Source: Trichoplax adhaerens
Taxonomy: Eukaryota > Animalia > Placozoa
Direction: 5' to 3'
DNA: 64,000 bases
NCBI RefSeq assembly: GCF_000150275.1
Contig: NW_002060943.1
Span: forward strand, 6,998,299-7,062,298
The position numbers and the translations under genes were made by a program. This document shows, in pieces, positions 41,726 to 58,658 of the stretch. The notes beneath the pieces were generated by a model. It ran no database searches. It worked only from the letters and a program-made list of their open reading frames with translations, and had not been told where the DNA came from. Within the stretch, counting starts at the first letter, position 1; every line of letters starts with the position of its first letter.

Positions 41726-44700
41726 TTATCGTCGATGAAAGTTAATAGGTAATAAATTAGGAGGGCCACCTGATGATGTTTCTTCAGATGAACTAGAACC
41801 TCCAGACATTCCTGCTAGGATATGCGATTTACGTTGTTTAACTGCACCTCTTTGGATCTGTCTAGCTCGAGATCCAAATCCTAAGCACTGCATTGATTCA
41901 GTTAAATGCCTCTTCATGGGTGATACACAAAGAAATACTAGCAACTTTGCATCGCCACCTAGCAAAGAAATAACAACCATGAATGCAAATCTTAATATGC
42001 ACTCGTATAAGTTATTATCGTAATTACAATACTATATTACAAAATTAATACATTTTTTACCTATGGAATCTTGCAACATCTGCGTTAGTTTACTATTTCG
42101 ATAGGGTACATGAGTGCGGTTTTCAGCTAGAGCACCTAATACATCGGCTAATGCAGATAAACTATGCAAAAAGTGATAGCGTATTAGCATTCAATTGACT
42201 CAATTCAAATAACCTAAAACAGTAAGACTACTTTTTTTTTATCACTAGTAGGTAGCAGACCTTCTGTTAATATGACGAGTTTCTCGTAATGCACTTCCTG
42301 TTACTCCCGACATGCCTAGATCAATTTGAAAACATTTTACAATTTTATAATTGTCTAGTAGTAAGGTTACCAAGTATCAATAGAGAATAGACAAAAGAAA
42401 TATGCTGCTTATAAAGCGAGAATTAAAATCTCATAGCCGCATATATCGCTATTCGCAATCAAAAGATAGCTCTAAGATAGATCAGTCATCATTTCATACC
42501 TACGCATTCACTTCCAGCCAAATCAACCAATTGCAGTTTGGTTTTAACTACAGTCTTTAAAGACCCAAAAGAAGGAGTTGATGCTAATCGCAATGGCGAA
42601 TAATGAACTGATTGACTACGCCGACTAGTAGTTTGTAGGTGAATTCCAGGGGAAAGAGGAATTTGAGATGTCCTTGATTCAGCACTCTTTTTTCTCGTCT
42701 TGATTTGCTGCAAAGATTGTGAATCATTTATTGTTGTTGTAATAGTCACCGTTACAATTAAATGAGAGCGACTTGAATGCGAATGAACTAGTGTAGCATC
42801 TTCATGACGATGCCTCATTCCATACATGACAGCTGCCATAACGTCGCTAACGTTGCTAACTGGCCTAAGATGTAGTAATAAAATTAGCTTACTTTAACTG
42901 CACATTACTGCACATGACCAACAAGCTTACTAATAAAGGTCTAGATATTTGACTGGAAGTCAAATTAAGATTATTAATTATCAATTTTAGTTAATTAAAC
43001 AAACATTTGCTAAGAATGATAATTTAAAAAAGTCGGTTGAAAATCACATTACAATTATGTTGACTACGTGCTATTTGTATTGATATGGGACAACTGTTGG
43101 TTATATAATTCCAAGAATGTATGATGATGTTACTTTAGCCACATGAATTTGCTACTATTTCAAAACAAACAATCGTATCAACTGCTATAAGTAGACTAAC
43201 TTCGTTATTAAGCTTGGAACATCATGTGAACCATCAGCGCTGGTAACAATTTCTAAATAGCGAGTATCTGAGCTATCCTATAAATTGACAAATGGATAAT
43301 ACCAATTTAATATGTTCTTGTATATTTTATACAAATTTTTCTTATAATAGTGCGTAATCTTCCCGTGAATACTAGCCAAACTCTGGTTTCGTTTTTATTA
43401 CAACTATGCATTACCTTCCGACCAATATTAAGAAGATCACGAACACTATTATTGTAAACTTCGGCAACTGAAATCTCCAAAGAATGAAAATTATGAGGAT
43501 GTTTTTGATTTTCTTCTCCAATCAGCCTAAAAAAATAATGAGCCCATTAAATGGTTACGTAAGTATTGGTGTTATGTTCAAATAATTAGTTAAAAATATC
43601 AATAAACGCCACTATAGATACCGGAAAAGCTCTCGAGCAGCTCGTGGGATTACACCTTCTTGTGCATGTGGAAGCTCAATATCAATCCAATCATTATTAT
43701 CAAATGAAGCATGCCCTCCTAGCATGGTATGGGTTTTACCAGAACCAGTTTGTCCATACGCCATAATGCAGACATTATAGCTAATTTCAAACATAGAATA
43801 ATCTGGTTGTTTATATCACAGGCATCGACATATGCAAAAATTGGACAGATTGATGAAAGCACTAATCGATCTATCTTAAGAAAACTATAAAGAAGAAATT
43901 GATGTAAAATTCAAGGAAATTAACCCATCTAGAAGTGATGTTAGAAGTGGAGCTACGTCATTAAATACAGCCTCTTGGGGATCTGATTGCGCAAAAACCC
44001 TACAAAATTCAGTATGGATGAGAGTTCAGATTAGCTTCAATCTTATAGTAAATTTTTAAAAAAACTTGATTTAGATTACCTTTCGTATTCGTATGTTTTG
44101 TCAGCATTAAATCGTGGATTTTTCACCATAATAGTTTCCTGTAATCGGATATAAGAGTATTATCAATTAAGTCCAATTTGGAGTTATAATAGTTTATCAT
44201 CATTCTAATTTTACGTAAAATTACTAAAAATTGTGATACCTCATCTATCCAATCAATAACTTGCTCTTTTGGACCACTTCTGCAATCAAAGCAGTTAATA
44301 AAATTAGGATGGAAGGTATTCCATAAAATTGTAACAAGAATAAAGATAGTACGGACTTACCTTACTTTACTAGGATCATCAGTATACTCATCATCAATTG
44401 GAAGAACAGGCCTGATTCGACAATGAACACGTATATTGCCCCGAAGTTCCTAATATTTTTTACATATATTTAATATATTCTATGACATATTGCAATGATA
44501 AAATTAAAATGTAAATTACTGTACAGTAGGTTATTATATCATTCCGTTTATGGCAATACGATTAGGCATTAACTACTTAACATATCTATCGTATTACCAC
44601 CAAAGTGTTGTGTAGCATTTTTCTTTTCTCTTTTTCTTTTTCATACAATTCTTTATACTGCTTTGCTAATATATCCAAGTTATCTACTTTGCTAACAATA

Positions 44701-45903
44701 TCTTTCAAAAGTATATAAAATAGTAGCTATTAATATAAAATCTCAACATATTATGTATAATATGATCTTAACGATTTGATACATCAACAGTTGTATTTTA
44801 GTTAACTGCATTAATGCAAATAGTCTATCTTTTTCTTGCACAAAACAGATGAATGTGATCATACTAGAATAATTGCTTTAAGAGTGTTAACAATCTACCT
44901 TTTAATGCCAAATATTTTTCACGACTTTTAGTAATTAATTTTTGTCCATAAGCTTTAGAAGCAGATAGAATTTGTGTAATATTATCATCCATTTGTACGG
45001 GTATGTTGGCAACATCTTGTTTTAAAGTAGAATAAGATTGTCTCATATCCTATCGAAAATAGACCAATTTTTACGATTTGAAATTGAAATAAGCCAAATT
45101 ACAACATAAAATGGAGGCATTAAACTAAAAATAGCTTTGTCAGAAAAAAGTTCTATTAGGACTACAATACCTTCAGCTCATCGTAAAATTGTTTCAGTGA
45201 TTGAATTGTTTGATTAACATTTTTCTCCTTGCTTTCAGTTATTCGCCGTTGATGAGCAATTTGGGAATTTAATTCTCTAATTTGACTCTGGCACTATACG
45301 CATATTAGTGAAAGTGAAAAAGTAATTTCATACAATTATCCTATACTACAATTATGGCTTGTGACACTGCATCTTTTGTAAAGAAATTAATTGATCGAAA
45401 GAGAAAACCATCAAGGCTTAACTGACAATATAGTAGAGCTTTATTAAGCAGATACGCTAGTAAAATTAATGCAAAGTTATACAAATCTAACCTTTGCTAA
45501 TTTCAAATAGAGCATAGCATTTTCTGTTTCCAAAGCTAGAATTTTCTCTTGTTTTGCCTTTAATTAATAATTTTAATTTTAAGGAAGACAATGAAGCTTA
45601 TGTATTTCGTTGATATCGATTTTAGTAACATACTATCGATGATTTGAAACTGTAAAATTGCATAAATATTGTCTATCTATATGCATATTGGCTCCTATCA
45701 TTATTATTGAGCATCCTAACTAGTTTAATCTAGCATATCAACAACAAACTATTAGTATTCTAAATTGTACACTGTATAAGACTGATCAATGGTATAATAC
45801 TTACCCTTGCCAAATTCTTACTCTTAGCAAAATGCGTTGTTTTATCGATAAAGACATCATCGCATGGAGAATTGACAGCGCTTAAATCTAATGGCATCAT
45901 CAT
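41726..45903 (-). CDS. KIF25: Kinesin-14 family C-terminal motor, KIF25 orthologue
   Basis: Exons give [30 protein letters not shown]|[15 protein letters not shown]-loop [23 protein letters not shown]25-type switch [73 protein letters not shown] and [13 protein letters not shown]. The start (ATG run 45903-45895) is approximate. Confidence 0.9.
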
Positions 45904-46449
45904 ATTGAAAATACTGTATAGGGATTAATAGGTTTCGTGTTCTAGCGGTATGACAATAACAAACGTAAACTGAATTGGTAAATTGGCTAATAAAATGTAG
46001 GCTGAATCTTAGCTTATTGGTGAATTAACTACAAATGCATCTACCGGAAAATAAATTATTTGATATTCGTATATCACTGGATGGCATTTAGCCATCAATT
46101 AGAAATGAGAATGTACATGAAAGGATGACTAGAATACTGTAATTTATTGGCTAAGAAATTGTTTATTTTACAGGCAGCTTAAATGACGTGTGATCACTGC
46201 TAATTTAGAACGATGCGCCAGTTGATTACCGTTTTAATCATAGGTACTTGTACAGTACACTGATCAGTACATGACTAATCTGATTTTATTCCGTTTATAC
46301 CTGTATACGATACAGTGGAGTGTATAGAGGCTAGCTGCAAAATAGAGAGATTCTATTATGCTTAACTCAAAAGCTTGTCCATGTAGTCTTTGATTTCTAT
46401 CACTTCCTACTAGAAGTAAATAAGATGCTAACTTTCTCAAGGCAAGCAT

Positions 46450-46860
46450 GGATATTGTTTCTACAGCAACGGAGCATGCGCAGTGATCCTTCCTAGTCTT
46501 GTTTGAAGATGTGTGACACGTCTACAGTCTACAGTACTTGTCTCGTGTTGTACTGTACTATACTTGTAGTTCCCCCAAAATTACTGAAATTGTACACAGC
46601 ACACCATACTGTGGCAGTAGGTTTAAAGCCTCGTGTTGCCAATGTCTCTTTGAGACAGGCATCTTGGCACAGTACTGTACGGTACAGTACTATAGACTGT
46701 AGACTCAGTGTCGAGGTCTTTATGGTCTGGTCCGGACTAGTCCGAACCAGACCAGACTTCAGAATCGAAATTTCGAAATTTTCGCATACTGTACTGTACA
46801 GTACTGTACAATGTACTGTACTGTACAGTATACGCTCACTAGTACTGTAGCGCCCTGCCG
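46450..46860. promoter_or_regulatory. Putative bidirectional promoter for KIF25 and TAF8
   Basis: Lies between divergent ATGs at 45903 (-) and 47122 (+). Contains GCATGCGCA (~46474, partial NRF1-like), TACTG/CAGTA arrays (46520-46560, 46670-46700, 46786-46850) and a 32-bp near-perfect palindrome (46723-46754). Confidence 0.55.
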
Positions 46861-47121
46861 GTTTTTGTCAGGAATTGAAATCTAAATACTCGTCTGCTGA
46901 CCTAATTTTGGAGCCCATTTGCTGGTCTGAGGAGCCATATCTTCACAACTGGCGAAATTGCAGTCGTTAGAATTGAAAGAATTCAACTGAAAGTCTTCAG
47001 GTTGCTATCCTTGTGTAGCATCAAGGATTAGCAACACTTTAGGGATCGATTGAATTCATTTTGGTATCGTTGTCACCCCTTTATTATTTATTCATCGATT
47101 GCTACTCCAAAGATTGCTATT

Positions 47122-49214
47122 ATGGCGGACGACGGTTATCGGCATTGCCTGCAACAAGCAATTGCAGTCATTACCTCTGAAGCTGGTTATACGTCTATAT
47201 CCAGCTTGGCACTTGAAACTATAACAGAGATGATACAAAGTGGTATGCTATAACACTAGCTGATCAATCTTGGTAGAATGCTTCGATACTTCGTTACAAG
47301 TGATCGACTGTAGCCCATGCATACATTACTCGCTCGTTTGCTCAGCATGATAAAGTTCACATTATGAATGTAACATCGTAACATAGTTTTAGCACTTTTC
47401 CATGCAATCGAATATCTTTTATACAATATGGCCTAGTCGAAAATGACGAACCAGTAACCCTACCAACGTTTGCTTGATGAATTTAGAATTATCTACAATA
47501 GGAGAAAAAGAATCCATTTTATAGCTATCGTATCATACAGCTTTGATCAGAAATCAGTACATATTTCATCATTTGCAGTAGTACACGAAGGTACCAGTTG
47601 ATCCGGCCTGTAAACGTTAATAATATAATGCTAATAAACTGGTCTGTAATAGAATCCTATTAATTATTCCTATGCGTAATATTCGGTATCATTCTTATAA
47701 TAAATAACGTTCAATGTTAGGGCATTTACGAAAACGTTCAATAATGAATACTTTAAATTTCTATCTGTAGTTCTCTGCGAAATTGGACGTTGCTCTCAAT
47801 CATTTTGCGAAATATCATCTCGCACCAAGCCAACTTTGTGTGACGTTGAACAAACTTTAATCAACACCGGTATGGTATGAAATGCCCTGAGTTTCTTTTC
47901 CTTGAATATCCATGTCATTGTATGGCAATATTTTACTACTGTACTCGTATAACAGGCATTGTTGTACTTACATATTCATAGTAGCTGTTTATCGCTAACA
48001 AGAAAGTGAAATTGCAATTACTGTAAAGTTGTGTTGTCTTCTTAACTCTAAGCTCTATCTGCATAATATCTGCCTGATTACTTATATTTTACAAACAACC
48101 GGAAATAGTAGTTAATATTTGCCATACAGTTCCATTAACCCTACCTTGTCGTATTATAAAAATTGCATATCCGATAGGTGGATACTAACCCAAGTAACTA
48201 TGTATTAAATTGTACCTGTAGTTGGATTCACTATTCAAGATGTGGCGAATTATTATCTACATGCACCAACGAGGAAAATCACTTCACGTAAGTTGGACAT
48301 AACAGTCTACTTACTGCATATCCCTGTGATAATTACTGACTGTAAGCAACCTCATCTTATAAATGCTACATAGCTGAAAAATTAAATGAAAAATCTCAAC
48401 CAAAGCTTATGACTGTGGGTACACCGCTGCCACTACCGAGCTACATCCCAGACCACTTACCGCCTCTGCCTAGTCCACATACTTACATTCGAACTCCGGT
48501 AGAAACGAAGTTGCATGACTGTTTTATGTCATACTTTTCACGAGTTATTACTAATAAATCATGAAATGTATTGACCAAAATCAATTTTAAACGATGCAGA
48601 CATACAAGTTTCCCAGTACTGAATATGCCACAGTGAGGAAAAAGCGCTCTGAAAGTGTAAGATGCAGCCGAAATAGCCTTATCAAGTAAGTCTTTCGTGA
48701 TTATATATGTGTGTACATTTATCTCTTGTAATTATTAGTAGTAGAAATACTTTTAATCATAAACAATAGCGTAGTTGCTTCGCTGACCTACCATTATATT
48801 TTCGTTGAATAAACGTAATAATTGATTGATAGATTTATCGTTAAAACATCCGGCACGTTATCGCTTGTTCATGAAGATTTAAATGAAAGTTTGTGTAAGT
48901 ACTGCATTCTCACTTGATAGAGAACTATGTTAAGAATAAAGATTAGTCGTAGGTCATAAAATGTAATATTAAATTGCCGGTACCATTTTACTGTAGTAAT
49001 TAAATCGAACCCTCCGGCTCTGTCGTATATGGACGCTTTGCTTTCATTTGAGGAAGATAAAATGGATCAATCTGACAATACACCGGAGCAAGACTCAGAT
49101 GATGACGACGATGATGATGATGATGATGATGATGACGACAGCGATGCCGAATCTGCGAAACCTTATAGAAATCCATTCCTCGAACCTCCTCAAAAACGAC
49201 CGGATAGTCCTTAA
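47122..49214 (+). CDS. TAF8: TFIID subunit 8
   Basis: Histone-fold (bromo-TP) region MADDGYRHCLQQAIAVITSEAGY...ALETITEMIQS|VLCEIGRCSQSFCEISSRTKPTLCDV; proline-rich PSYIPDHLPPLPSPHTYIRTP|TY; C-terminal YMDALL...poly-Asp...RNPFLEPP; stop ends at 49214. Confidence 0.93.
49100..49140 (+). repeat. (GAY)n trinucleotide repeat encoding poly-Asp in TAF8
   Basis: gatgatgacgacgatgatgatgatgatgatgatgacgac. Confidence 0.9.
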
Positions 49215-52200
49215 TATTTTGCGACAAGCTTTTTGTAATATAATTTAATATTCTGTTTTAACGGAAAAACGGTGCTAAATTATTATCCATGTTAGCGGTA
49301 GTAGGCGAAACGGTGGACCGCTGTATATGCGTTTTACTTTCTTGTATGATAAGGTGATATATGCGCCATATTTGTTGAATGTACACTGAAATGGCAGTAT
49401 AGAATTGAATTAGCTTATCATCACCGGGTGAGAGTTTCGATATAACCATTGTTTTTACGGTAATCTTATTTCTGAAAATCGAACCATTATATTTCTGTGA
49501 ATCCTTGGATAGATTAATGTAATATACAGTACATAGATGGCTCACAACATTAATGATCGTCTTAGCTAGTTTCCAATATGCTGCATAAAACCATCTGAAT
49601 TCACATTTTATTTCATATAAAACAACATACTAGATAAACCAAAAAACTCATCAATAAGAAATGCACGGTAACACCCGTATAAAAATTATACCATGGGTCA
49701 CGATTGTGTGTTGAAGAATGTTATTATCTAAGTTCAAACTTTATATGCTGATTCTACTCAACATTGGTGACTGTGAATATTGTACAAAATAAAAGGTGCT
49801 ATACTGTACAGATAGATTTATATACTGCATGATTTAGGTTGATGTACCCAAGGCAATACTTTAATCCTATGTAAGGAAGCAGGGAAGGCCAGCTTAACAG
49901 AATTTGTTTATTTATACAAAAGTAGAAAAAACAGTCCAGACAAATAATGTAAAGGAATGGATACAGTATGCGCACATGAAGATGCATATAATGATTCCAG
50001 TGTCTGCTGGATCCTAGGTTGATGTATTCCTTCAAACAGTATGTACGAATGGTATGATTGTAATTAAAAAAATATAATTGTGTAGTACAAGACATTCTCG
50101 TTTTCGGAGAAAGGTCAGTACATTTTCAGCTAATACACTGAAAAGTTAGTTGCTTTGCGTGTATCTTGCCGGGACAGCAGGCAAAATGCTGGAAGCAACC
50201 TTTTATTTTCGGTGATTCCTCAAGTTGTAATGATGCACTGTTCTGATTATAGGTATGAAATAGGTAGGCTCCTTAGCAGTACAGTGTGTTTTAAATTTAT
50301 GACTACAATTACTTTAAATAATCAAGATTGATATATGTGTACTTTATATGTACTTTAAATGTATCCATGTATCCACGAGCTATATTCTACCCTGTTATGT
50401 GAGAATACTCTTTTGATATGCTTGCAAAATTGATCATTAATCTGAGCGGCAATTTTTGAATCTGTAGCATGCTTTTACGAATTTTAGACGATTGCATGAA
50501 TCTTGACATAAGATACATTCCTAATGATAATCGTAATCTAATCTAAAATATCTTAATTAATTCGTTCCTAATACTGTTATAAGATTTGAATTTATAAACC
50601 ACTTTGTACGAAATTTACACCTTCGTATATGCTTTTCAAATATAAGTACTATATACTCTCCAATGCAGTACAATTAATCTTTTACTCTGCATTATCAACC
50701 ATACTCCTTACTGCAACTACTTAGGTAATGGAGATGAATTAGGTAACTCTCCTAGATTTTTGAACCCTCCAATTTCATTTTCTAATTTGATTGGTGCAGT
50801 CGTGTTAACAAATTAATTCCAGTACTATTATATGACACATATTTGAGTTAAAGATTAAACCCTCATCATATCTAGATCAACTAAAATTTAGGCTCACAAA
50901 ATTTGTCTGAAAAATTTTCTACACTGAATATCTTTAGAAAATGTTTAATAAAGAACACAAGCACACCATAGTCAATTTAGTAATAAGCCTACTGGAATAT
51001 TGTGCACTATGATTGAATGAATGATCGCAAAACGAAAGAAGTTTCATTGGCATCTTTTCTAGTTTATGGAATACTCCGCCAAAAATCTAACAAAATTTAT
51101 CTTAAAAACTTCAAAGGTTGCCGTTAATTAATAGATCAAGTAATCGCCAGATAACCAGACATGTATAAATTTTTACTATTTCAAGTAATAAACGCAATTG
51201 TAGCTATTGATAATAAAAATATACGAGCCTAAAAGAGTGATATTAATGAAGACTACCAAATCATCAATCATACTATTGATTTATAATGAAAGCGGGTGTA
51301 ATTCTATTTACTACGATATATTGTAGGGGTTTTGAGGACAGCATGCAATAAGTACCGCTGGTACATATTTTTGCTCTTAAATTCTTTACATTTTGGCCAC
51401 AAAAAAATTTACCCAAGACAATATCTTGAACGCTTCTATTACCTTTATATTTATACCTAACTCGCTACACCCTTCGATTCGATGAGCCATTAATTTTAGA
51501 GTATTCTGCTTAGAATCACACTTTCAATATTTACTGGCTTGGTTTAAAAATTCATGAAATCATTGCTAATTGTCTTCATGTTTAACACACTCTCTCGCCA
51601 TAATCTCAAAATAGTAGCAGCTATTTACGTGCGGAGTCTAAAGCGATTGCAAAATACGTAGACACGGTTGCTTATAGAGTACTATATCTATACGTGCTCT
51701 AAATTAAGCAATAATGACTCCAAAAGGCGATCTACATATATAGTATTTTAAATACAACTTTATCCTTGATAGTTCGTAACTGAGACATTAATTCTATATT
51801 TGTCTAATACTCAGGGCTATAGTGAGTAAGTGAACTATCTCATATAGCTACTAGGCTATCATGACAACTTCGAATTCTTTTAAGTACAAGTATATATGCG
51901 TATATTAATACGTCAAATTAAGATTAAAATTAGCCAATAACGCTGTAAACCCTCCATTTATAAGTTGAGAATCTCATGAACTTAATTATAAATACATCAC
52001 ACTAGAGCAATAAAGTTCATTAAATTTAAAGCAAGGTTAATTCTTAGTGTTAACGAATCAACACCTAATCTACACTAGATTTATCAATATAGACCAGTTG
52101 ACAGCGCTTATTAACTTCATTTTGCATCAAGTTAGATAATCATTTGTGGAGTTGGAACAAATTGAGAAAAAGACTGCTATTTAAGCCATACAGTAGAACT

Positions 52201-52272
52201 TTACCTTATTTCTGTCTGAACCTCAGTACTTGAGATATCAGGATTTCTATTAATATTTCCAGTTGAACAGAA

Positions 52273-55200
52273 ATGCTGAAAATATCCAAAAAATTGAATA
52301 AGGGACAAAAAAGGCGTCAGCAACTTCATAAAAGAGAAGTATTTAATGCTAAAGTAAGTTAGCATTTTATTATTTTTTATTTACTATTAAATAGATAGAA
52401 TATTATAGTTAAAGATTCTATCTTTGAAGAAATGATATCTATTTGCAGGTAGAATTTATTTTTATAAGTGATAATATTATCGCAGTAGAATCATTAGTGA
52501 TTTCGCCTTGATCGCTAGGTTGCCGATGTTATCACTAGTAATGAATATAAGCCAGGAGAACCTTACTATGTCGTCGAAATAACTACGTTATTAGAGCATC
52601 CTTTTCAGCTCGTAAACGGAGCCATTGTTCAAAAACTATCAACCTATGGAATATTAACGAAACAACAGTTGCCTAAAGTAAGCACAGTGTCAATTAGTAC
52701 CAGAAATTTGTATGCAATACGTAAATATCGAGGCCATAAAGTGTAAAAGTAAATCCTAAAATGGCCCAAACAGTTACTTCTTATTTGTACGAATTAGAAC
52801 TAAAAATTTTATCATCTTAATCAAAATTCAAAATCTGTAATTTTTTTCTTTATTTCAAAACTATTAGTTACCAAGAATTATAATCTTTACGCCTATGGGT
52901 AAAGCTCATGTGAATTTTATCGCACGTGAGAAGCCATTATTTCTTACTGAAGAAGAATTAGACAATTGTGAGAAATTTCATCGATTTTTATTTGAGAATG
53001 TTATCAAGACAAGAAAAGATACAAGATTTATCAAAAATGAATCTATTAAGTACTATCTCGTTGTCCCACTAAGGTATCAAATATATTATTAAGAATAAAT
53101 AATTGATTTATTGTAGTATTATTAAACATCGTAAATTGATTGGTACCGGGTAATAATTTAGAGAAATAAAAATTACGTTCTTCAGATTTTTACCAAATAA
53201 AGTATTTAATATCTACTCTATATTCTACCCAAAATCATGATATTTGCTTCCATACTGTAAGCCTACCATTAATATTTACAAACATCCACAGTTAAGATAT
53301 TCAATAACACAGTATGCTACGTTTAATTATTTAACTTAAGTATAATATTATAACTGCAAATTTTATTGTAGAGAAAATGGAGAACTTCATTATGAATTAA
53401 TAACAAGTTGCATTAATTTTCTTCGCAATGAAAATTACCCAAATCGTCAAGTATGTAAAGAAGTTATATTACAATTTCCGCATCAAGTTGTAGTAAAGCC
53501 AAGCTACTCTCTAAATAGTCAGAGTTTAAATTGGATGCTAATTAGAAAGGTAAGCGATGCAACACCTATGTCTGAATTTCATGACACATCTATTGCGGCA
53601 ACATTTTATGATTACTATAAAAATCAATACTCGATTGACATCAGCGATAAAGAGCAAAAGTTAGTCTGCCTCCGAAAAATACCAAGTAATAACAACATGC
53701 TGAAGAAATTTCATAGAATATTAACCCTTACGTCAAAATCTAAGCAATCGCCCCACTTTGTACCGGAATTGTTAGCTATTCATCCGTTGTCTGCAAGCCG
53801 TTTTATGACTACAGTCTGCTTGCCTTCGATCTTATTTCGTGTAGAATCATTACTCTCCGTCGATGAACTCCGGCTAAAGATAGCTCGAGAAACTGGACTG
53901 GGCTTAGATGATAGTAGAATGGATAATAGTTTTATTCCACTCCTTCAAGATGCATCAACTTATTACACCAAAAAGATTGGGATTTTGCCTCATGTTTTTC
54001 ATCAAATTAAATTAAAAGATCGCTATACGCTAATAACCTTAGGCAATGGAAAAGATAATTATTTACATATATCCAATGAAGAAAAAAGAAGACTTGTCGA
54101 TCGAAAATTGAAAAGAGGTCGAGAAAAGAAGAAGCAGCTCGTAATTAACCATTGCAAGCAGTTGCGAAGAACGATCAGTAAGCTAACAAAGAAAACTAGA
54201 AAGTGGTTAAAAATTGTGCCTATTTCAGTCAGTAAGCGTCTCTTTCCTAAATTTCATCGTCGCTTATTGCATTCCAAATTGAAATCTAATCGAAATAAAG
54301 CTGTTTTGAAAAGGCCAGGCCCAAGTGTTTCAATGCTACTGCAGGCTCTCACATCGCTATCAGCAGACGATTTCTTCAATCATGAACGCTTGGAAATTCT
54401 AGGAGATTCCTACTTAAAGTTTATCACTACTGCCGATTACTTCTTTCGAAATCCAAATATGAAAGAGGGTGCTATGAGTCTTATGCGTGCCATTAATGTC
54501 TCTAATTCCCATTTATCACGTACTAGCAAGCTCAAAGGATTAACACTGTACCAATTCAACACACCATTCAAATTAAAGCAATGGTTACCACCTGGGTTTA
54601 CCTGCATTAGGAATAACGCTAATCTTGTTGCAAATAATATGCTTACGGACGGTAGTAAACAGCGTGATAGCGAATCTTTTAAACAAGTTATGTCAGTTAA
54701 AAATATTTCTGATACCGTTGAAGGCCTGGTTGGTGTTTATTCTTTAGCTAGCGGACCAGTTGATGCAGCTCGGTTATTGCCTTGGATTGGATTAGACATT
54801 GATCCGAATGTATTAATAGAAAAGGATAAAAGCGTAAATTTTGAAATACCAACGACTGATGAAGATATCCAATTAAGTAGCTGTATACTCCGTAATACTG
54901 ATTATCAATTTAATAACTTTTATTGGTTACGAATAGCTTTTACACACTCATCTGTTGCCAGTGAAAACTATCAACGATTAGAATATCTGGGCGATGCTAT
55001 ACTCGAATATTTATTGATTGAGTTTGTCTACTGTCGAAAACCATACTTTGGACCTGGTAAAATTTCACATTTCAAGTCGGTAATGACGCGTAATCAGACA
55101 TTTAGTCTAATCGCCATAGCATTCCAATTTTACACGCATATTCGATGCCATTCAAAGTTAAAATTAGATATTATGGATAGTATTCAAAATTTTAAAGAAA

Positions 55201-55957
55201 TATTGTTGGTTAGTATTAATTAATTCACGATATAGATCATGTCCTTTTAATCGTTTATCCCTAAAGTATCCCTGCGAAACAGATCACAAAGAATTAGTTA
55301 ATGAATATTTTGTATTTTAGGATAACCATCAAGATGATCATCAGCCAGACATTGGACACTTTGCAAATCTGGCATATCAATTGTATACTTCTAATCGGTA
55401 TCAGAAACTCCCCAAAGTCTGTGCCGACGTCTTTGAAGCCTTTATTGCTGCCATTTATTTGGATTGTGGTAAAAAATTGAGAACAGTTTGGAAAGTTGTG
55501 TACAAAATGGTTCAACGAATTCTAGGTACAGAACATATACGAGCATAACAACAGTGTTTCAAGCAATAAAATAAATATATAACATTTTTTGTTTCGATTA
55601 GCTGATATTCTCAATGACGTAGGTGGTCTAACTAGTACTATCCATGATATGTTTCCAAACAGAATTAGATATCAGTAAGGTTTCATATCATAAATTATCC
55701 AGAATATTGTAGATACTTGATTATGTTATCAGTTCACCCATTTGACTAATCGAAATCTTCATCATTTTAGAGTAATCAAAAGGAGTAATTCAAGTAAAAA
55801 GCATCGTAGGATGTTCCTTGATCATCCCAAATTGGGCATGCTGACTTCTGAAGGCATAGGAACAAGCAATACATCAGCTAAAGATGATGCCATCCGCAAC
55901 ATGCTCTCACATCTGGAGTGTTCAGATCAAGAGATTGAAAGTAGCAACAAGTCCTGA
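52273..55957 (+). CDS. Dicer-family RNase III, short form (platform-PAZ-connector-RNase IIIa-IIIb-degenerate dsRBD; no helicase seen)
   Basis: Platform: GQKRRQ..., PGEPYY, YGILTKQQLPK|LPRIIIFTPMG. PAZ: ATFYDYYKNQYSIDISDKEQKLV. Connector: FVPELLAIHPLSAS...VCLPSILFRVESLLSVDELR. RIIIa: PGPSVSMLLQALT, HERLEILGDSYLKF, KNISDTVEGLVG. RIIIb: AFTHSS, YQRLEYLGDAILEY, PKVCADVFEAFIAAIYLDCG. dsRBD-like: GIGTSNTSAKDDAIRNML. Exons ~52273-52353, 52519-52677, 52868-53073, 53372-55208, 55321-55525, 55602-55674, 55771-55957. The true N-terminus is unresolved. Confidence 0.93.
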
Positions 55958-56350
55958 CGATGAAAATATAAATTGTGGACGACGTTATAACTTTAAGAAG
56001 ATAGGCTACAATTTACAAACGTTTTATTACTGACAATTTCATAAAGCATCCATTAATATAAATCATCTTAATTTTATACACCTTTTAAATCATCATTACT
56101 AACATATGAAAAAAGTGTGTGGAATTATTGTGGAAATTACTTTATCATACCGCTCGAATATTGTACAGTTACTAGTAGCTACTAATGTTCAGTAAATTGT
56201 CAATTAGTGATGATCCTTTTTAATCATATTTAAGAAAGCACTTGGCAGCTATGGAGTACTTCTTTTACAATACAGGTCGAAAATAATTTTATTTGTACAT
56301 ATATTTTCAAAAACATTTTTAACTTGGAATCCAGCGAGATGTCGACAACA

Positions 56351-58283
56351 TTAGCTTTTTACGAATAGAAACATTGTGCGTCCAAAACCTAATGAGAATA
56401 GCAAGCAATTTATTATAAGTATTAAGATTTGCACAATTACTATACCATATACCACAACTTGATAGGCATGAATGAAATCAACATCCGTACATATACTATA
56501 CTATATATTATCATACACAATAACAAATAAATAAATGATCATCATTGGATGATTACTAATATCTCTGATGGCATCATACACTTTATTACCAAAAAAGATC
56601 AACGCTAGAATTATATAACAGTTGAAATAAGATGATGGAAGTAAAATCATTCTTCTCATCACATACCTTTAACAGCGTCGTTTGGAATGGGAAGTGTTTG
56701 GCATGATGAGAATCCGATTTCTTCAGATAGTAAATAATCGTTAAACTGATCGGGCATTAACTTGATTTCATCAAAGTTTTTACGAAAAGTCGCCTAAAGA
56801 TACATAATATATGCATGGAATTCAAGTTAGATACAGCTAGCAATCAATGTGCTCTTCATCTAAAAATTTGAGCTCGCTTCGTTGATAAGTATATTAGCAG
56901 TCAATGTGTATGCTTAATGCTAACATATTGAATTGCCTAATTATTCTTAAAAGGAGTTACATACAGATAAACGTTTTTTCTTTTTGTAAGATTCGATAGA
57001 TTGAGGCTCTAGGATTAGGATACCATCATGACGTAAATTCATAAATATACGTTTGAATAGTTTTTTGACACCTTCATCACCCCAGTTGAGATGGATCCAT
57101 TTTGTTAAACTTAGGCATAAAATAACATCATATAGTGGTTTTTCTTCATTAATACTTTCCATTGATTCTTTAATGTAGTTCTCCTGTAGAATAGTATTAC
57201 ATGCATGTAATGAATGAGTTTCTTTTCGTAGCTAAGCTAACATAACATTAATGAAACAACAGGCTACAGTTATGCATGCCAGTAAAGTTACATTGATACG
57301 AGTATGAGCATATTCGTATGAAGACAACTCGCCCAAGCAATGCAATGTACTGTTCCTCTACAACGTTAGGTGACAAAAAAATTATTATTATTAGCAATTC
57401 ATTATACCTGCTTAAATAAGATGTTTCTTGGATAGAGTGTACTATCATCGTTGCAAGTATCAACTATAGGTCCATGACAAATGCCAAATGATATAGGAAA
57501 TTGATGATTCTTGGTTGAATTAATTCGCGTAATATTTGAACGAGCTCGTGTAATTAATGAGGCATCAATGTCAATGCCAACGATGGTATTGGGATTGAAT
57601 TTTTTAGCAATTTCTATGGTTAAATGGCCATCATTGCATCCAATATCGAGACAATCTTTCCCTTGAAACCATTGGTGATTCCATGAATCTAACCTACCAT
57701 CATGTGTTGATTGATTTCTATAACCGTAGTATCTATTGTAATTTCCATATATAAATAATTTTTGTTTGGAATTTTTTTCCTTTAGGGTTGTTTCGACAAG
57801 TTCCACTTTGTCCTGGCGAATTTTCTTTAGGGTTTGTAGGTCATTTTTATCATCATTATCCTTACTTAATTTCCTTTTCTTTTTGTGCTGTTTCAGAGAT
57901 CGGACACGTTTATCGTATTCTCTGTCTTCCCTACTGAGCATTAATGGATCACTGGTTTGTGGTGGAACTAAAATTTGATCCTCATTGGTCACATTCTTGA
58001 CGTTGGCGAGGCGTCGATGAGAAGGAGAAACGTGTGGTGTGTCCGCTTTCAGGCGATTATTGATCTCTGGATCGAGTAAACTACGCAAATTTAATGGATC
58101 AGTTGGATCTTGAGGTTTACTTGGCAAGAGCGATTTTTCACTCGATAAACTACGACGTACTTTGGCTTTTTTGGTCTTTTTATAGCTTAAATTGGCTTTC
58201 TTGCCGCGCTCTTGATGACTTGGACTAGTTTCACTAATGAAATTTTGCCTCCATGTCGTTGCGCCACTCATGTTTACTTCCAT
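56351..58283 (-). CDS. MEPCE: 7SK snRNA methylphosphate capping enzyme (Bin3/BCDIN3 family methyltransferase)
   Basis: DPTDPLNL, FIYGNYNRYYGYRN, SAM motif CLDIGCNDGHLT, GIDID, YDVILCLSLTKWIHLNWGDEG, ILILEPQ, C-terminal GFGRTMFLFVKS*. Exons 58283-57408, 57183-56965, 56793-56667, 56389-56351. Confidence 0.93.
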
Positions 58284-58658
58284 TGGCTAATCCTAAAGGA
58301 TTGCAATTAGGAAAGGCGTCCCCGATCAACGACAATTTAGAAATGAGTCCAGTAGTATCGTGTGGACGATAGTTTAGCGCTGATTTCACCTCCTTCCCTG
58401 CACACAATATGAATCGAAATCAATGGGAATTCTACCTGTCGCCTAGATGATGCCTGCTGGAGATCTGCAGTCTTGATTTTGCTCCTTTACTCCTACTCAA
58501 CGAGTATTAAAAGCCAAATTGAAATTGATCTTTTGCTAGTCGCTTCGTCGCTATGGAACATGTTGCCGTGGGCCAAGCACGAGTCCACTGTAAGTGGTCA
58601 ATAGCCATACCCAGGGTACTATACTACCACTCGTACTGTCCACTCCTAAAATTCCCGG

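What the first reader, a model, noticed from the sequence alone, without database searches (positions are those of the whole stretch)
49800..55957. Helicase-less minimal Dicer with both RNase III active sites intact
Seen: platform, PAZ, connector helix, RIIIa (ERLEILGD; SDTVE) and RIIIb (QRLEYLGD; ADVFE) with all catalytic acidic residues, in roughly 900 aa. Only ~2.5 kb separates the TAF8 poly(A) signal (~49788) from the first platform exon (~52273), and I see no GxGKT, DExH or other helicase motif and no clear DUF283 there. Known: canonical animal Dicers have an N-terminal DExD/H helicase that is autoinhibitory; Giardia Dicer lacks it, and N-terminally truncated mouse oocyte Dicer dices long dsRNA more efficiently; placozoans have several Dicer paralogues but reportedly no miRNAs. 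Inference: a specialised, ATP-independent siRNA-generating paralogue, pointing to a non-canonical RNAi branch.
Basis: partly seen in the sequence, partly recalled or inferred. Interest (0 to 1): 0.8.

Follow-up and report, generated by a model that had tools for sequence, protein, structure and literature searches.

The report
Helicase-less Dicer paralogue in Trichoplax
This is a real, intact and selectively maintained Dicer gene of the placozoan Trichoplax adhaerens that starts at the platform domain and has no helicase or DUF283. The gene is already catalogued as TRIADDRAFT_52058 / 'Dicer D', and whether it works as an ATP-independent siRNA maker is untested.

Summary
Window 52273-55957 (+) encodes the public 915-aa model TRIADDRAFT_52058 (TadhD) in seven GT-AG exons. 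Its layout is a basic N-terminal exon, platform, PAZ, connector helix, basic linker, RNase IIIa, RNase IIIb and a dsRBD-like tail. All eight catalytic acidic residues are present.

No helicase or DUF283 coding was found in the 3.06 kb between the TAF8 stop (49214) and the ATG, or anywhere else in the window. The largest open + frame there is 65 aa. There are no Pfam hits, no tblastn hits with paralogue helicase exons, and no GxGKT, DExH or QxxGR motifs. The independent Trichoplax sp. H2 assembly is collinear here and carries the same 915-aa model, so mis-assembly is unlikely.

Three of the four other Trichoplax Dicer genes carry the helicase in one 510-556-aa exon with DECH and QxxGR. The fourth has a degenerate 443-aa version.

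Orthologous exons on two other contigs, presumably placozoan (63-66% identity), give dN/dS of 0.18-0.23, so this is not a pseudogene.

The ATP-independent dicing function is inference only, and the 5' end lacks transcript evidence. The gene appears in published Dicer surveys, so novelty is modest.

The parts
49215..52272 (+). Spacer between the TAF8 stop codon and the Dicer ATG, with AATAAA at 49788. It has no helicase or DUF283 coding capacity.
   Evidence: The largest stop-free + segment is 65 aa. No Pfam hits. No tblastn hits with paralogue helicase/DUF283 peptides or with fungal and oomycete Dicers. No GxGKT, DExH or QxxGR motifs. The stretch is unique in the genome, has no Rfam hit and no N.
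52273..52353 (+). Exon 1: ATG plus a 27-aa leader that is 37% Lys/Arg. It has no homology to other Dicers and could be an NLS or RNA-binding segment (speculative).
   Evidence: Exon boundaries from threading P0001 on the window; the donor is AAA|gtaagt. An in-frame TGA lies 2 codons upstream of the ATG. K/R fraction. Exon 2 has no Met and opens right at its acceptor, so an upstream start exon is required.
52519..52677 (+). Exon 2: N-terminal part of the platform domain.
   Evidence: Alignment to mouse and human Dicer starts at residue 20-25, equivalent to human residue ~750, just after DUF283. Canonical AG/GT boundaries.
52868..53073 (+). Exon 3: C-terminal part of the platform domain.
   Evidence: PF20931 Dicer_platform. 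tblastn match to the platform exons of paralogues L001, L003 and L004.
53372..55208 (+). Exon 4 (612 codons). It holds PAZ (53535-53792), the connector helix (53790-53924), a lineage-specific basic linker (53925-54311), RNase IIIa (54312-54845; ERLEILGD 54384-54407, SDTVE 54708-54722) and the N-terminal part of RNase IIIb (QRLEYLGD 54972-54995).
   Evidence: Pfam results. phmmer alignment to mouse Dicer. Coordinates. Orthologous open exons in L006 and L007, with dN/dS 0.18-0.23.
55321..55525 (+). Exon 5: C-terminal part of RNase IIIb with the second catalytic pair (ADVFE, 55423-55437).
   Evidence: Pfam Ribonuclease_3 profile positions 77-102. Matches to the equivalent exon of paralogues L001, L002 and L004. 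ADIFE is conserved in L007.
55602..55674 (+). Exon 6: linker between RNase IIIb and the C-terminal tail.
   Evidence: Exon map. Conserved in L007.
55771..55957 (+). Exon 7: dsRBD-like C-terminus (GIGTSNTSAKDDA at 55850-55891) plus the stop codon.
   Evidence: The phmmer alignment runs to the end of the mouse Dicer dsRBD (query 656-913; also 3c4b). The AF2 model gives strand-strand-strand-helix at 856-901 with pLDDT about 46-71. There is no Pfam dsrm hit, so this part is tentative.

Best explanation
The gene is a genuine, selectively maintained Dicer paralogue (Dicer D lineage; TRIADDRAFT_52058). It descends from a full-length animal Dicer and has lost everything upstream of the platform domain, namely the RIG-I-like DExD/H helicase and DUF283. 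It keeps platform, PAZ, connector helix, both catalytically complete RNase III domains and a dsRBD-like tail. It has gained a short basic leader and a conserved basic linker before RNase IIIa.

Most likely mechanism (inferred): it acts as a stand-alone molecular ruler. PAZ/platform anchors a 2-nt 3'-overhang dsRNA end. The connector sets the distance. The intramolecular RNase IIIa/IIIb dimer cuts both strands. No ATP is used, there is no helicase-driven threading or end discrimination, and the Hel2i surface that binds dsRBP partners is absent. It would therefore be a distributive, non-autoinhibited dicer of long dsRNA or hairpins, working beside three helicase-bearing paralogues and one with a degenerate helicase.

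Shown: gene integrity, domain content, absence of helicase coding, purifying selection. Inferred: expression, the exact 5' end, activity, substrate and ATP-independence.
For: Identity. The window is T. adhaerens scaffold_1. The public models are 915 aa in both T. adhaerens and Trichoplax sp. H2.

Gene structure. Seven canonical GT-AG exons.

Domains. [quoted passage not shown] Foldseek's best match is mammalian Dicer in the dicing state.

Absence of helicase and DUF283. Every Dicer_dimer hit in the genome lies inside one of the four other Dicer genes, so there is no stand-alone helicase-DUF283 gene.

Paralogues. They carry the helicase in one 443-556-aa exon. DECH and QxxGR are present in three of them. 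Such an exon would be easy to see here if it existed.

Assembly. H1 and H2 are collinear over 42273-58648 at 99.35% identity, and the stretch has no N.

Selection. dN/dS is 0.18-0.23 against two other contigs, presumably placozoan, with catalytic motifs conserved. H1 versus H2 shows 9 non-synonymous changes out of 17 coding differences, against 77% expected under neutrality (p = 0.025).
Against: No transcript-derived protein fragments of the N-terminus were found. The ATG at 52273 and exon 1 are therefore predictions, and possible acceptor sites (ccag, acag) lie just upstream of the ATG.

The N-terminal state of the orthologues in other lineages is unknown, because their contigs are only 2.4-2.6 kb.

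The AF2 model is poor for residues 1-218. The dsRBD is not recognised by Pfam.

One PAZ 3'-pocket residue appears changed to Ser (the Arg next to the first Tyr, residue role from memory).

No biochemical or small-RNA data exist for this protein.
Confidence: 0.7

Rival explanations
1. The gene model is incomplete at its 5' end. One or more short, non-helicase coding exons lie in 49.8-52.27 kb and splice into or replace exon 1, so the true N-terminus differs from the predicted basic leader. The protein would still lack a helicase.
For: Exon 1 is only a prediction. Possible acceptors lie immediately upstream of the ATG. Exon 1 has no homologues. Both public 915-aa models may share one annotation lineage.
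Against: The frame of exon 1 is closed by a TGA two codons upstream of the ATG. The 250 bp upstream of the ATG carries 7 H1/H2 substitutions, about 4 times the local mean, which is unlike coding sequence. No + strand open segment in the spacer exceeds 65 aa, and none has any Pfam or paralogue similarity.
Confidence: 0.15
2. The protein is catalytically competent but does not produce siRNAs. For example, it could be a nuclear or structured-RNA processing enzyme (Drosha-like or Rnt1-like role), targeted by its basic leader and linker.
For: The leader is 37% K/R and the linker 28% K/R, with the motif TRKW-x3-PISV-x-[KR]RLFP conserved in all three lineages. According to the literature, Trichoplax lacks Pasha and miRNAs (PMC3840309, PMC3563972), which leaves room for unconventional RNase III roles.
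Against: The PAZ aromatic pocket and the connector are retained. This is the end-measuring apparatus that Drosha lacks. PDB similarity to Dicer is E 1e-66, against 1e-9 for Drosha. Nuclear localisation is pure speculation from composition.
Confidence: 0.12
3. A helicase is supplied from elsewhere: distant exons, trans-splicing, an assembly error, or a separate helicase-DUF283 gene acting as a split Dicer.
For: None found.
Against: There are no Helicase_C, ResIII or Dicer_dimer hits in the window or in the 16 kb downstream. Every Dicer_dimer hit in the genome lies inside another complete Dicer gene. TAF8 sits on the same strand immediately upstream. Two independent assemblies are collinear.
Confidence: 0.02
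4. The gene is a truncated pseudogene or an unexpressed relic.
For: It sits on a long stem branch (1.33 substitutions per site) and is very divergent from its paralogues. No transcript-derived fragments were found.
Against: All seven exons are open and have canonical splice sites. The 612-codon exon is open in three lineages with dN/dS 0.18-0.23. All catalytic residues are conserved in the orthologues.
Confidence: 0.02

Closest known systems
Mammalian Dicer (human 5ZAK, mouse 7ZPI) and the mouse oocyte isoform Dicer-O (7YYN)
   Same: It is the best sequence match (E about 1e-66) and the best fold match. Platform, PAZ, connector, RNase IIIa, RNase IIIb and dsRBD are collinear, and all catalytic E/D/D/E residues are conserved. 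Like Dicer-O and engineered helicase-deleted Dicer, it lacks helicase parts described as autoinhibitory (established knowledge: Ma et al. 2008; Flemr et al. 2013, from memory).
   Different: Dicer-O is an alternative-promoter isoform that lacks only HEL1 and keeps Hel2i, HEL2 and DUF283. Here a separate gene lacks the whole helicase and DUF283. The arginines of the 5'-phosphate pocket are not conserved (residue roles from memory). The long acidic insert of RNase IIIa is replaced by a ~130-aa basic linker before RNase IIIa.
Giardia intestinalis Dicer (2FFL), the archetypal minimal Dicer
   Same: The functional layout is the same: platform-PAZ-connector-RNase IIIa-RNase IIIb with no helicase and no DUF283. 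Giardia Dicer dices without ATP (established knowledge, MacRae et al. 2006, from memory).
   Different: Sequence similarity is very weak (E 1e-6, one RNase III stretch only). Giardia Dicer has no dsRBD, whereas this protein has a dsRBD-like tail. This protein is clearly derived from animal Dicer, so the helicase loss is independent.
The four other Trichoplax adhaerens Dicer genes (scaffold_1 at 3.89, 6.31, 6.97 and 7.08 Mb)
   Same: The exon plan from the platform exon onward is shared: a platform exon, one large PAZ-to-RNase IIIb exon, then an RNase IIIb C-terminal exon. They group together in a tree that contained no other animal Dicers.
   Different: Three of them have ResIII/DEAD, Helicase_C (with DECH and QxxGR) and Dicer_dimer. 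The 7.08 Mb gene has a 443-aa exon without those motifs and only a weak Dicer_PBD hit. This gene has none of these. Identity to them is only 24-27%, and it sits on a long separate branch.
Drosha
   Same: Tandem RNase III domains plus a dsRBD, and no helicase.
   Different: Drosha has no PAZ and depends on DGCR8/Pasha. PDB similarity is only E 1e-9, confined to RNase IIIa. This protein has Pfam PAZ and platform domains above their cut-offs.

Membership tests
Eukaryotic Dicer (PAZ-containing tandem RNase III) | Two RNase III domains in one chain, each with its catalytic E...D / D...E residues | tested here: met
   PF00636 matches twice, E 7e-32. ERLEILGD/SDTVE and QRLEYLGD/ADVFE align with the mouse Dicer catalytic residues.
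Eukaryotic Dicer (PAZ-containing tandem RNase III) | PAZ domain with the aromatic 3'-end pocket | tested here: met
   PF02170 scores 33-34 bits against a cut-off of 28.8. The P-x-Y and YYK-x-x-Y tyrosines align with mouse Dicer, while the neighbouring Arg is Ser. PMC3991619 reports the 3' pocket conserved in all Trichoplax Dicers except DicerA.
Eukaryotic Dicer (PAZ-containing tandem RNase III) | Platform domain and connector helix linking PAZ to the RNase III core | tested here: met
   PF20931 scores 41.2 bits against a cut-off of 26.5. Residues 289-333 align with the mouse connector. AF2 predicts a helix at 290-323.
Canonical animal Dicer (full-length architecture) | N-terminal RIG-I-like DExD/H helicase (HEL1, HEL2i, HEL2) | tested here: not met
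   No Helicase_C, ResIII or DEAD hit in the window. No tblastn hit with paralogue helicase exons. No helicase motifs I, II or VI in the spacer. The maximum open frame there is 65 aa.
Canonical animal Dicer (full-length architecture) | DUF283 / Dicer_dimer domain | tested here: not met
   The six PF03368 hits in the genome all lie in the other four Dicer genes. Nothing was found in P0001 or in the upstream segments.
Canonical animal Dicer (full-length architecture) | C-terminal dsRBD | tested here: inconclusive
   phmmer aligns residues up to 913 with the mouse Dicer dsRBD. AF2 gives strand-strand-strand-helix at low to moderate pLDDT. There is no Pfam dsrm hit.
Minimal (helicase-less) Dicers, Giardia type | Platform-PAZ-connector-RNase IIIa/b without helicase or DUF283 | tested here: met
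   See the rows above. This describes the architecture only, not common descent: 2FFL matches at only E 1e-6.
Minimal (helicase-less) Dicers, Giardia type | ATP-independent cleavage of dsRNA into fixed-length duplexes | not testable with these tools
   Needs recombinant protein assays and small-RNA sequencing.
Drosha | No PAZ; central domain and Pasha/DGCR8 dependence | tested here: not met
   PAZ and platform are present. Drosha chains match only the RNase IIIa stretch, at E 1e-9.

The most novel reading that the evidence does not exclude
The Dicer D lineage is an old minimal Dicer retained across several placozoan lineages. After the helicase and DUF283 were deleted, a conserved basic linker (TRKW-x3-PISV-x-[KR]RLFP) and a basic leader took over RNA holding or localisation. 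This would give the animal a constitutively active, ATP-independent dicer for antiviral or transposon dsRNA. It would be a gene-level counterpart of the mouse oocyte Dicer-O isoform, in an animal with no miRNA pathway.
Probability: 0.25. Interest if true: 0.6.

Novelty: new member of a known kind. Interest (0 to 1): 0.4.

Why it matters
Helicase removal is known to de-repress mammalian Dicer, and helicase-less Dicers were previously characterised mainly in protists and fungi. This gene is helicase- and DUF283-less, animal-derived and under purifying selection. In the same genome it sits beside three motif-intact paralogues and one with a degenerate helicase. That makes a natural series for asking what the helicase contributes (processivity, end discrimination, partner binding, autoinhibition), in an animal that lacks miRNAs. 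The practical value is a compact (915 aa) animal Dicer core for biochemical and structural work. It does not change current views unless activity and expression are shown.

Tried and rejected
- Word-index protein searches with the large exon, the whole model and residues 1-160. They found only the T. adhaerens/H2 model and two short orthologous contigs. No N-terminal or transcript-derived fragments turned up, and the Trichoplax paralogues were too divergent to be retrieved.
- JGI metagenome scan. The single locus, L009, is a Piwi/Argonaute that matched through its PAZ domain only, so it is irrelevant.
- AF2 with a 21-row alignment. The RNase III core is good, but residues 1-218 have pLDDT below 50. 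The model says nothing reliable about the leader or the platform.
- Rfam, repeat and self-similarity checks of the spacer found nothing.
- Pfam on the - strand 98-aa ORF at 49799-50095 found nothing.
- Literature search for the gene identifiers found only PMC3991619. de Jong et al. 2009 is not in the held library, so its domain figure and cDNA evidence could not be read.
- The large representative-protein search and the protein atlas were not used, because the protein's family is not in doubt.
- No exon sequences joined by me were handed to any search or folding tool. Whole-protein steps used the public model P0001 by id. Exon borders were obtained by threading P0001 on the window inside one script, and nothing was saved.
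- No contig looked human.
Full report
**What is there.** The window is Trichoplax adhaerens scaffold_1 (G000:C1414:6998299-7062298; 105.6 Mb assembly). The + strand of 52273-55957 encodes the public protein TRIADDRAFT_52058 / XP_002108012 / B3RLM8 (P0001, 915 aa). Gao et al. 2014 list this protein as T. adhaerens Dicer 'TadhD', 915 aa (PMC3991619, Table 1). Trichoplax sp. H2 carries an equally long model (RDD41993.1, 9 amino-acid differences).

Threading P0001 on the window gives seven exons with canonical GT-AG borders:
- 52273-52353
- 52519-52677
- 52868-53073
- 53372-55208
- 55321-55525
- 55602-55674
- 55771-55957

**Domain content.** Pfam finds the following:

| Family | Score / E-value | Cut-off |
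|---|---|---|
| Dicer_platform | 41.2 bits | 26.5 |
| PAZ | 33 bits | 28.8 |
| Ribonuclease_3 (two stretches) | E 7e-32 | 27 |

Against all PDB chains, the best matches are mouse and human Dicer (E about 1e-66). Three blocks align:
- Residues 20-333 align with platform, PAZ and connector. This corresponds to human residues ~750-1084, so the match starts just after DUF283.
- Residues 463-566 align with RNase IIIa.
- Residues 656-913 align with RNase IIIb and run on to the end of the dsRBD.

The four catalytic motifs line up with the mouse catalytic E/D and D/E pairs:
- ERLEILGD, 54384-54407
- SDTVE, 54708-54722
- QRLEYLGD, 54972-54995
- ADVFE, 55423-55437

The PAZ tyrosines (P-x-Y and YYK-x-x-Y) are kept, while the adjacent Arg is Ser. 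The arginine cluster that forms the 5'-phosphate pocket in human Dicer has no counterpart here (the residue roles are from my memory of Park et al. 2011 and Tian et al. 2014).

The C-terminus is dsRBD-like by alignment and by a strand-strand-strand-helix in the AF2 model. Confidence is low and Pfam dsrm does not fire.

Foldseek puts mammalian Dicer in the dicing state first (7ZPI). The AF2 model is unreliable for residues 1-218.

**Is the helicase really absent?** The upstream + strand gene is TAF8 (Bromo_TP and TAF8_C). Its stop is at 49214 and an AATAAA sits at 49788. The 3,058 bp up to the ATG show the following:
- No stop-free + segment is longer than 65 aa.
- None of the twelve + strand segments tested (all but four of those of 30 aa or more) has a Pfam hit pointing to a helicase or a Dicer domain.
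- tblastn with every open segment of 40 aa or more from the four paralogous Dicer loci, and with eight full-length fungal and oomycete Dicers, hits only platform, PAZ and RNase III sequences. Nothing hits the spacer, the rest of the window or the next 10 kb.
- No GxGK[TS], DExH or QxxGR occurs in any + frame.

Genome-wide scans also give nothing in the window:
- Helicase_C: 99 matches.
- ResIII: 32 matches.
- Dicer_dimer: 6 matches, all inside the other four Dicer genes, so there is no stand-alone helicase-DUF283 gene that could complement this one.

The spacer is single-copy, has no Rfam match and contains no N. The independent H2 assembly is collinear across 42273-58648 at 99.35% identity, which argues against mis-assembly.

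**Comparison with the paralogues.** All five Dicer genes lie on scaffold_1, at 3.89, 6.31, 6.97, 7.05 (this one) and 7.08 Mb.

| Locus | Helicase exon | Motifs and Pfam families |
|---|---|---|
| 3.89 Mb | 556 aa, single exon | DEAD/ResIII, Helicase_C; DECH and QxxGR; Dicer_dimer |
| 6.31 Mb | 517 aa, single exon | DEAD/ResIII, Helicase_C; DECH and QxxGR; Dicer_dimer |
| 6.97 Mb | 510 aa, single exon | DEAD/ResIII, Helicase_C; DECH and QxxGR; Dicer_dimer |
| 7.08 Mb | 443 aa equivalent exon | Motifs lost; only weak Dicer_PBD (E 5e-4) and weak Dicer_dimer (E 0.19) |
| 7.05 Mb (this gene) | none | none |

From the platform exon onward the exon plan is shared by all five. The simplest history is therefore a 5' deletion of a full-length Dicer gene, followed by acquisition of a new first exon. 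That history is inference.

Exon 2 contains no Met and opens exactly at its acceptor, so an upstream start exon is needed. The predicted exon 1 fits: the ATG is preceded two codons upstream by an in-frame TGA, and it has a good donor. It remains unverified by transcripts.

**Is it alive?** Two short contigs, one from an environmental metagenome assembly and one from a public sequencing run (L006 and L007, 63-66% amino-acid identity), carry the orthologous large exon, and it is open in both. L007 also carries exons 5 and 6 with introns, and every catalytic motif visible on the contigs is conserved.

| Comparison | Nei-Gojobori dN/dS |
|---|---|
| T. adhaerens vs L006 | 0.20 |
| T. adhaerens vs L007 | 0.18 |
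| L006 vs L007 | 0.23 |

Synonymous sites are near saturation in the deeper pairs, so those two ratios are, if anything, overestimates.

Between H1 and H2, 9 of 17 coding differences are non-synonymous, against about 77% expected under neutrality (one-sided p = 0.025). By contrast, the 250 bp just upstream of the ATG holds 7 substitutions.

In a quick ML tree the D lineage forms a clade with 100% support on a long stem (1.33 substitutions per site). It is sister to the other four Trichoplax paralogues with SH-aLRT 84. That tree had no other animal Dicers and only the quick search finished, so it says nothing about the Dicer1/Dicer2 affiliation.

**Lineage-specific features.**
- Exon 1 is 37% Lys/Arg.
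- Residues 334-462, between the connector and RNase IIIa, are 28% Lys/Arg. They contain a motif conserved in all three lineages, TRKW-x3-PISV-x-[KR]RLFP. This stretch does not align with mammalian Dicer.

**Mechanism (inferred).** The protein has PAZ/platform, a connector and a complete intramolecular RNase III dimer, and no ATPase. It should therefore measure from a 3'-overhang end and cut both strands without ATP, as Giardia Dicer and helicase-deleted human Dicer do (established knowledge, from memory). It would lack helicase-dependent threading of blunt dsRNA, and it would lack the Hel2i platform for TRBP/Loqs/R2D2-type partners. The basic leader and linker may add non-specific RNA affinity or nuclear targeting, which is speculation.

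The published context is as follows:
- Trichoplax has five Dicers (PMC3991619).
- It has apparently lost Dicer1/AGO1 and miRNAs (PMC3563972).
- It lacks Pasha (PMC3840309).
- An antiviral role for the Dicer expansion has been proposed (PMC3991619).

**Novelty.** The gene and its length are in the public record and in at least one published Dicer survey. That paper's figure of domain organisation, which I could not see, presumably already shows the short architecture. The accessible texts do not discuss the absence of the helicase in this gene.

New here are four points:
- The genome-level demonstration that the truncation is not a gene-model artefact.
- The graded series among the five paralogues.
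- Evidence of purifying selection across lineages.
- The conserved basic linker.

Helicase-less Dicers are a known kind, so I class this as a new (animal) member of that kind, of moderate interest.

**Limits.**
- There are no transcript data.
- The N-termini of the orthologues were not recovered.
- de Jong et al. 2009 is not in the held library.
- The large representative-protein search was deliberately not run.
- No exon sequences joined by me were submitted to any tool. The public model P0001 was used by id instead.

Noticed in passing
L003:4188-5516 (G000:C1414:7076687-7078015, + strand), about 25 kb downstream of this gene: The neighbouring Dicer paralogue at 7.08 Mb has a 443-aa exon in the position of the helicase exon. 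It lacks DECH and QxxGR and gives no Helicase_C, DEAD or ResIII hit. It shows only a weak Dicer_PBD hit (E 5e-4) and 17-19% identity to the other paralogues' helicase exons. It is probably an ATPase-dead, degenerate helicase.
   Followed up: partly
G000:C1414 at 3.89, 6.31, 6.97, 7.05 and 7.08 Mb: All five Trichoplax Dicer genes lie on one scaffold. Three of them sit within about 110 kb (6.97 Mb on the - strand; 7.05 and 7.08 Mb on the + strand). This looks like an old, much diverged local gene cluster.
   Followed up: partly
window 53925-54311 (residues 334-462): A basic linker (28% K/R) lies between the connector helix and RNase IIIa. It contains a motif conserved in three lineages, TRKW-x3-PISV-x-[KR]RLFP. 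It has no counterpart in mammalian Dicer and no Pfam match.
   Followed up: partly
window 52026-52243 and 55315: There is a local excess of H1/H2 substitutions just upstream of the Dicer ATG: 7 in about 220 bp, against a mean of 0.65%. There is also a 4-bp indel in intron 4.
   Followed up: no
window ~56320-58283, - strand: The convergent downstream gene is a Bin3/MePCE-type methyltransferase (451 aa in the H2 annotation; Pfam Bin3 and Methyltransf families). It is an RNA-capping enzyme next to a Dicer, which is probably coincidence.
   Followed up: no
window 49029-49214, + strand: The last TAF8 exon ends in an uninterrupted run of 14 Asp residues inside an acidic tail.
   Followed up: no
G000:C1409:3646849-3647100 (+) and G000:C1413:3498184-3498444 (-): There are two further RNase III hits outside the Dicer genes. 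One lies in a 1444-aa open frame and may be Drosha. The other has four in-frame stops in the match, so it may be intron-split or broken.
   Followed up: no
L009:396-3650: A JGI metagenome contig was pulled in by the PAZ peptide pattern. It encodes a 1084-aa Piwi/Argonaute protein, not a Dicer.
   Followed up: yes
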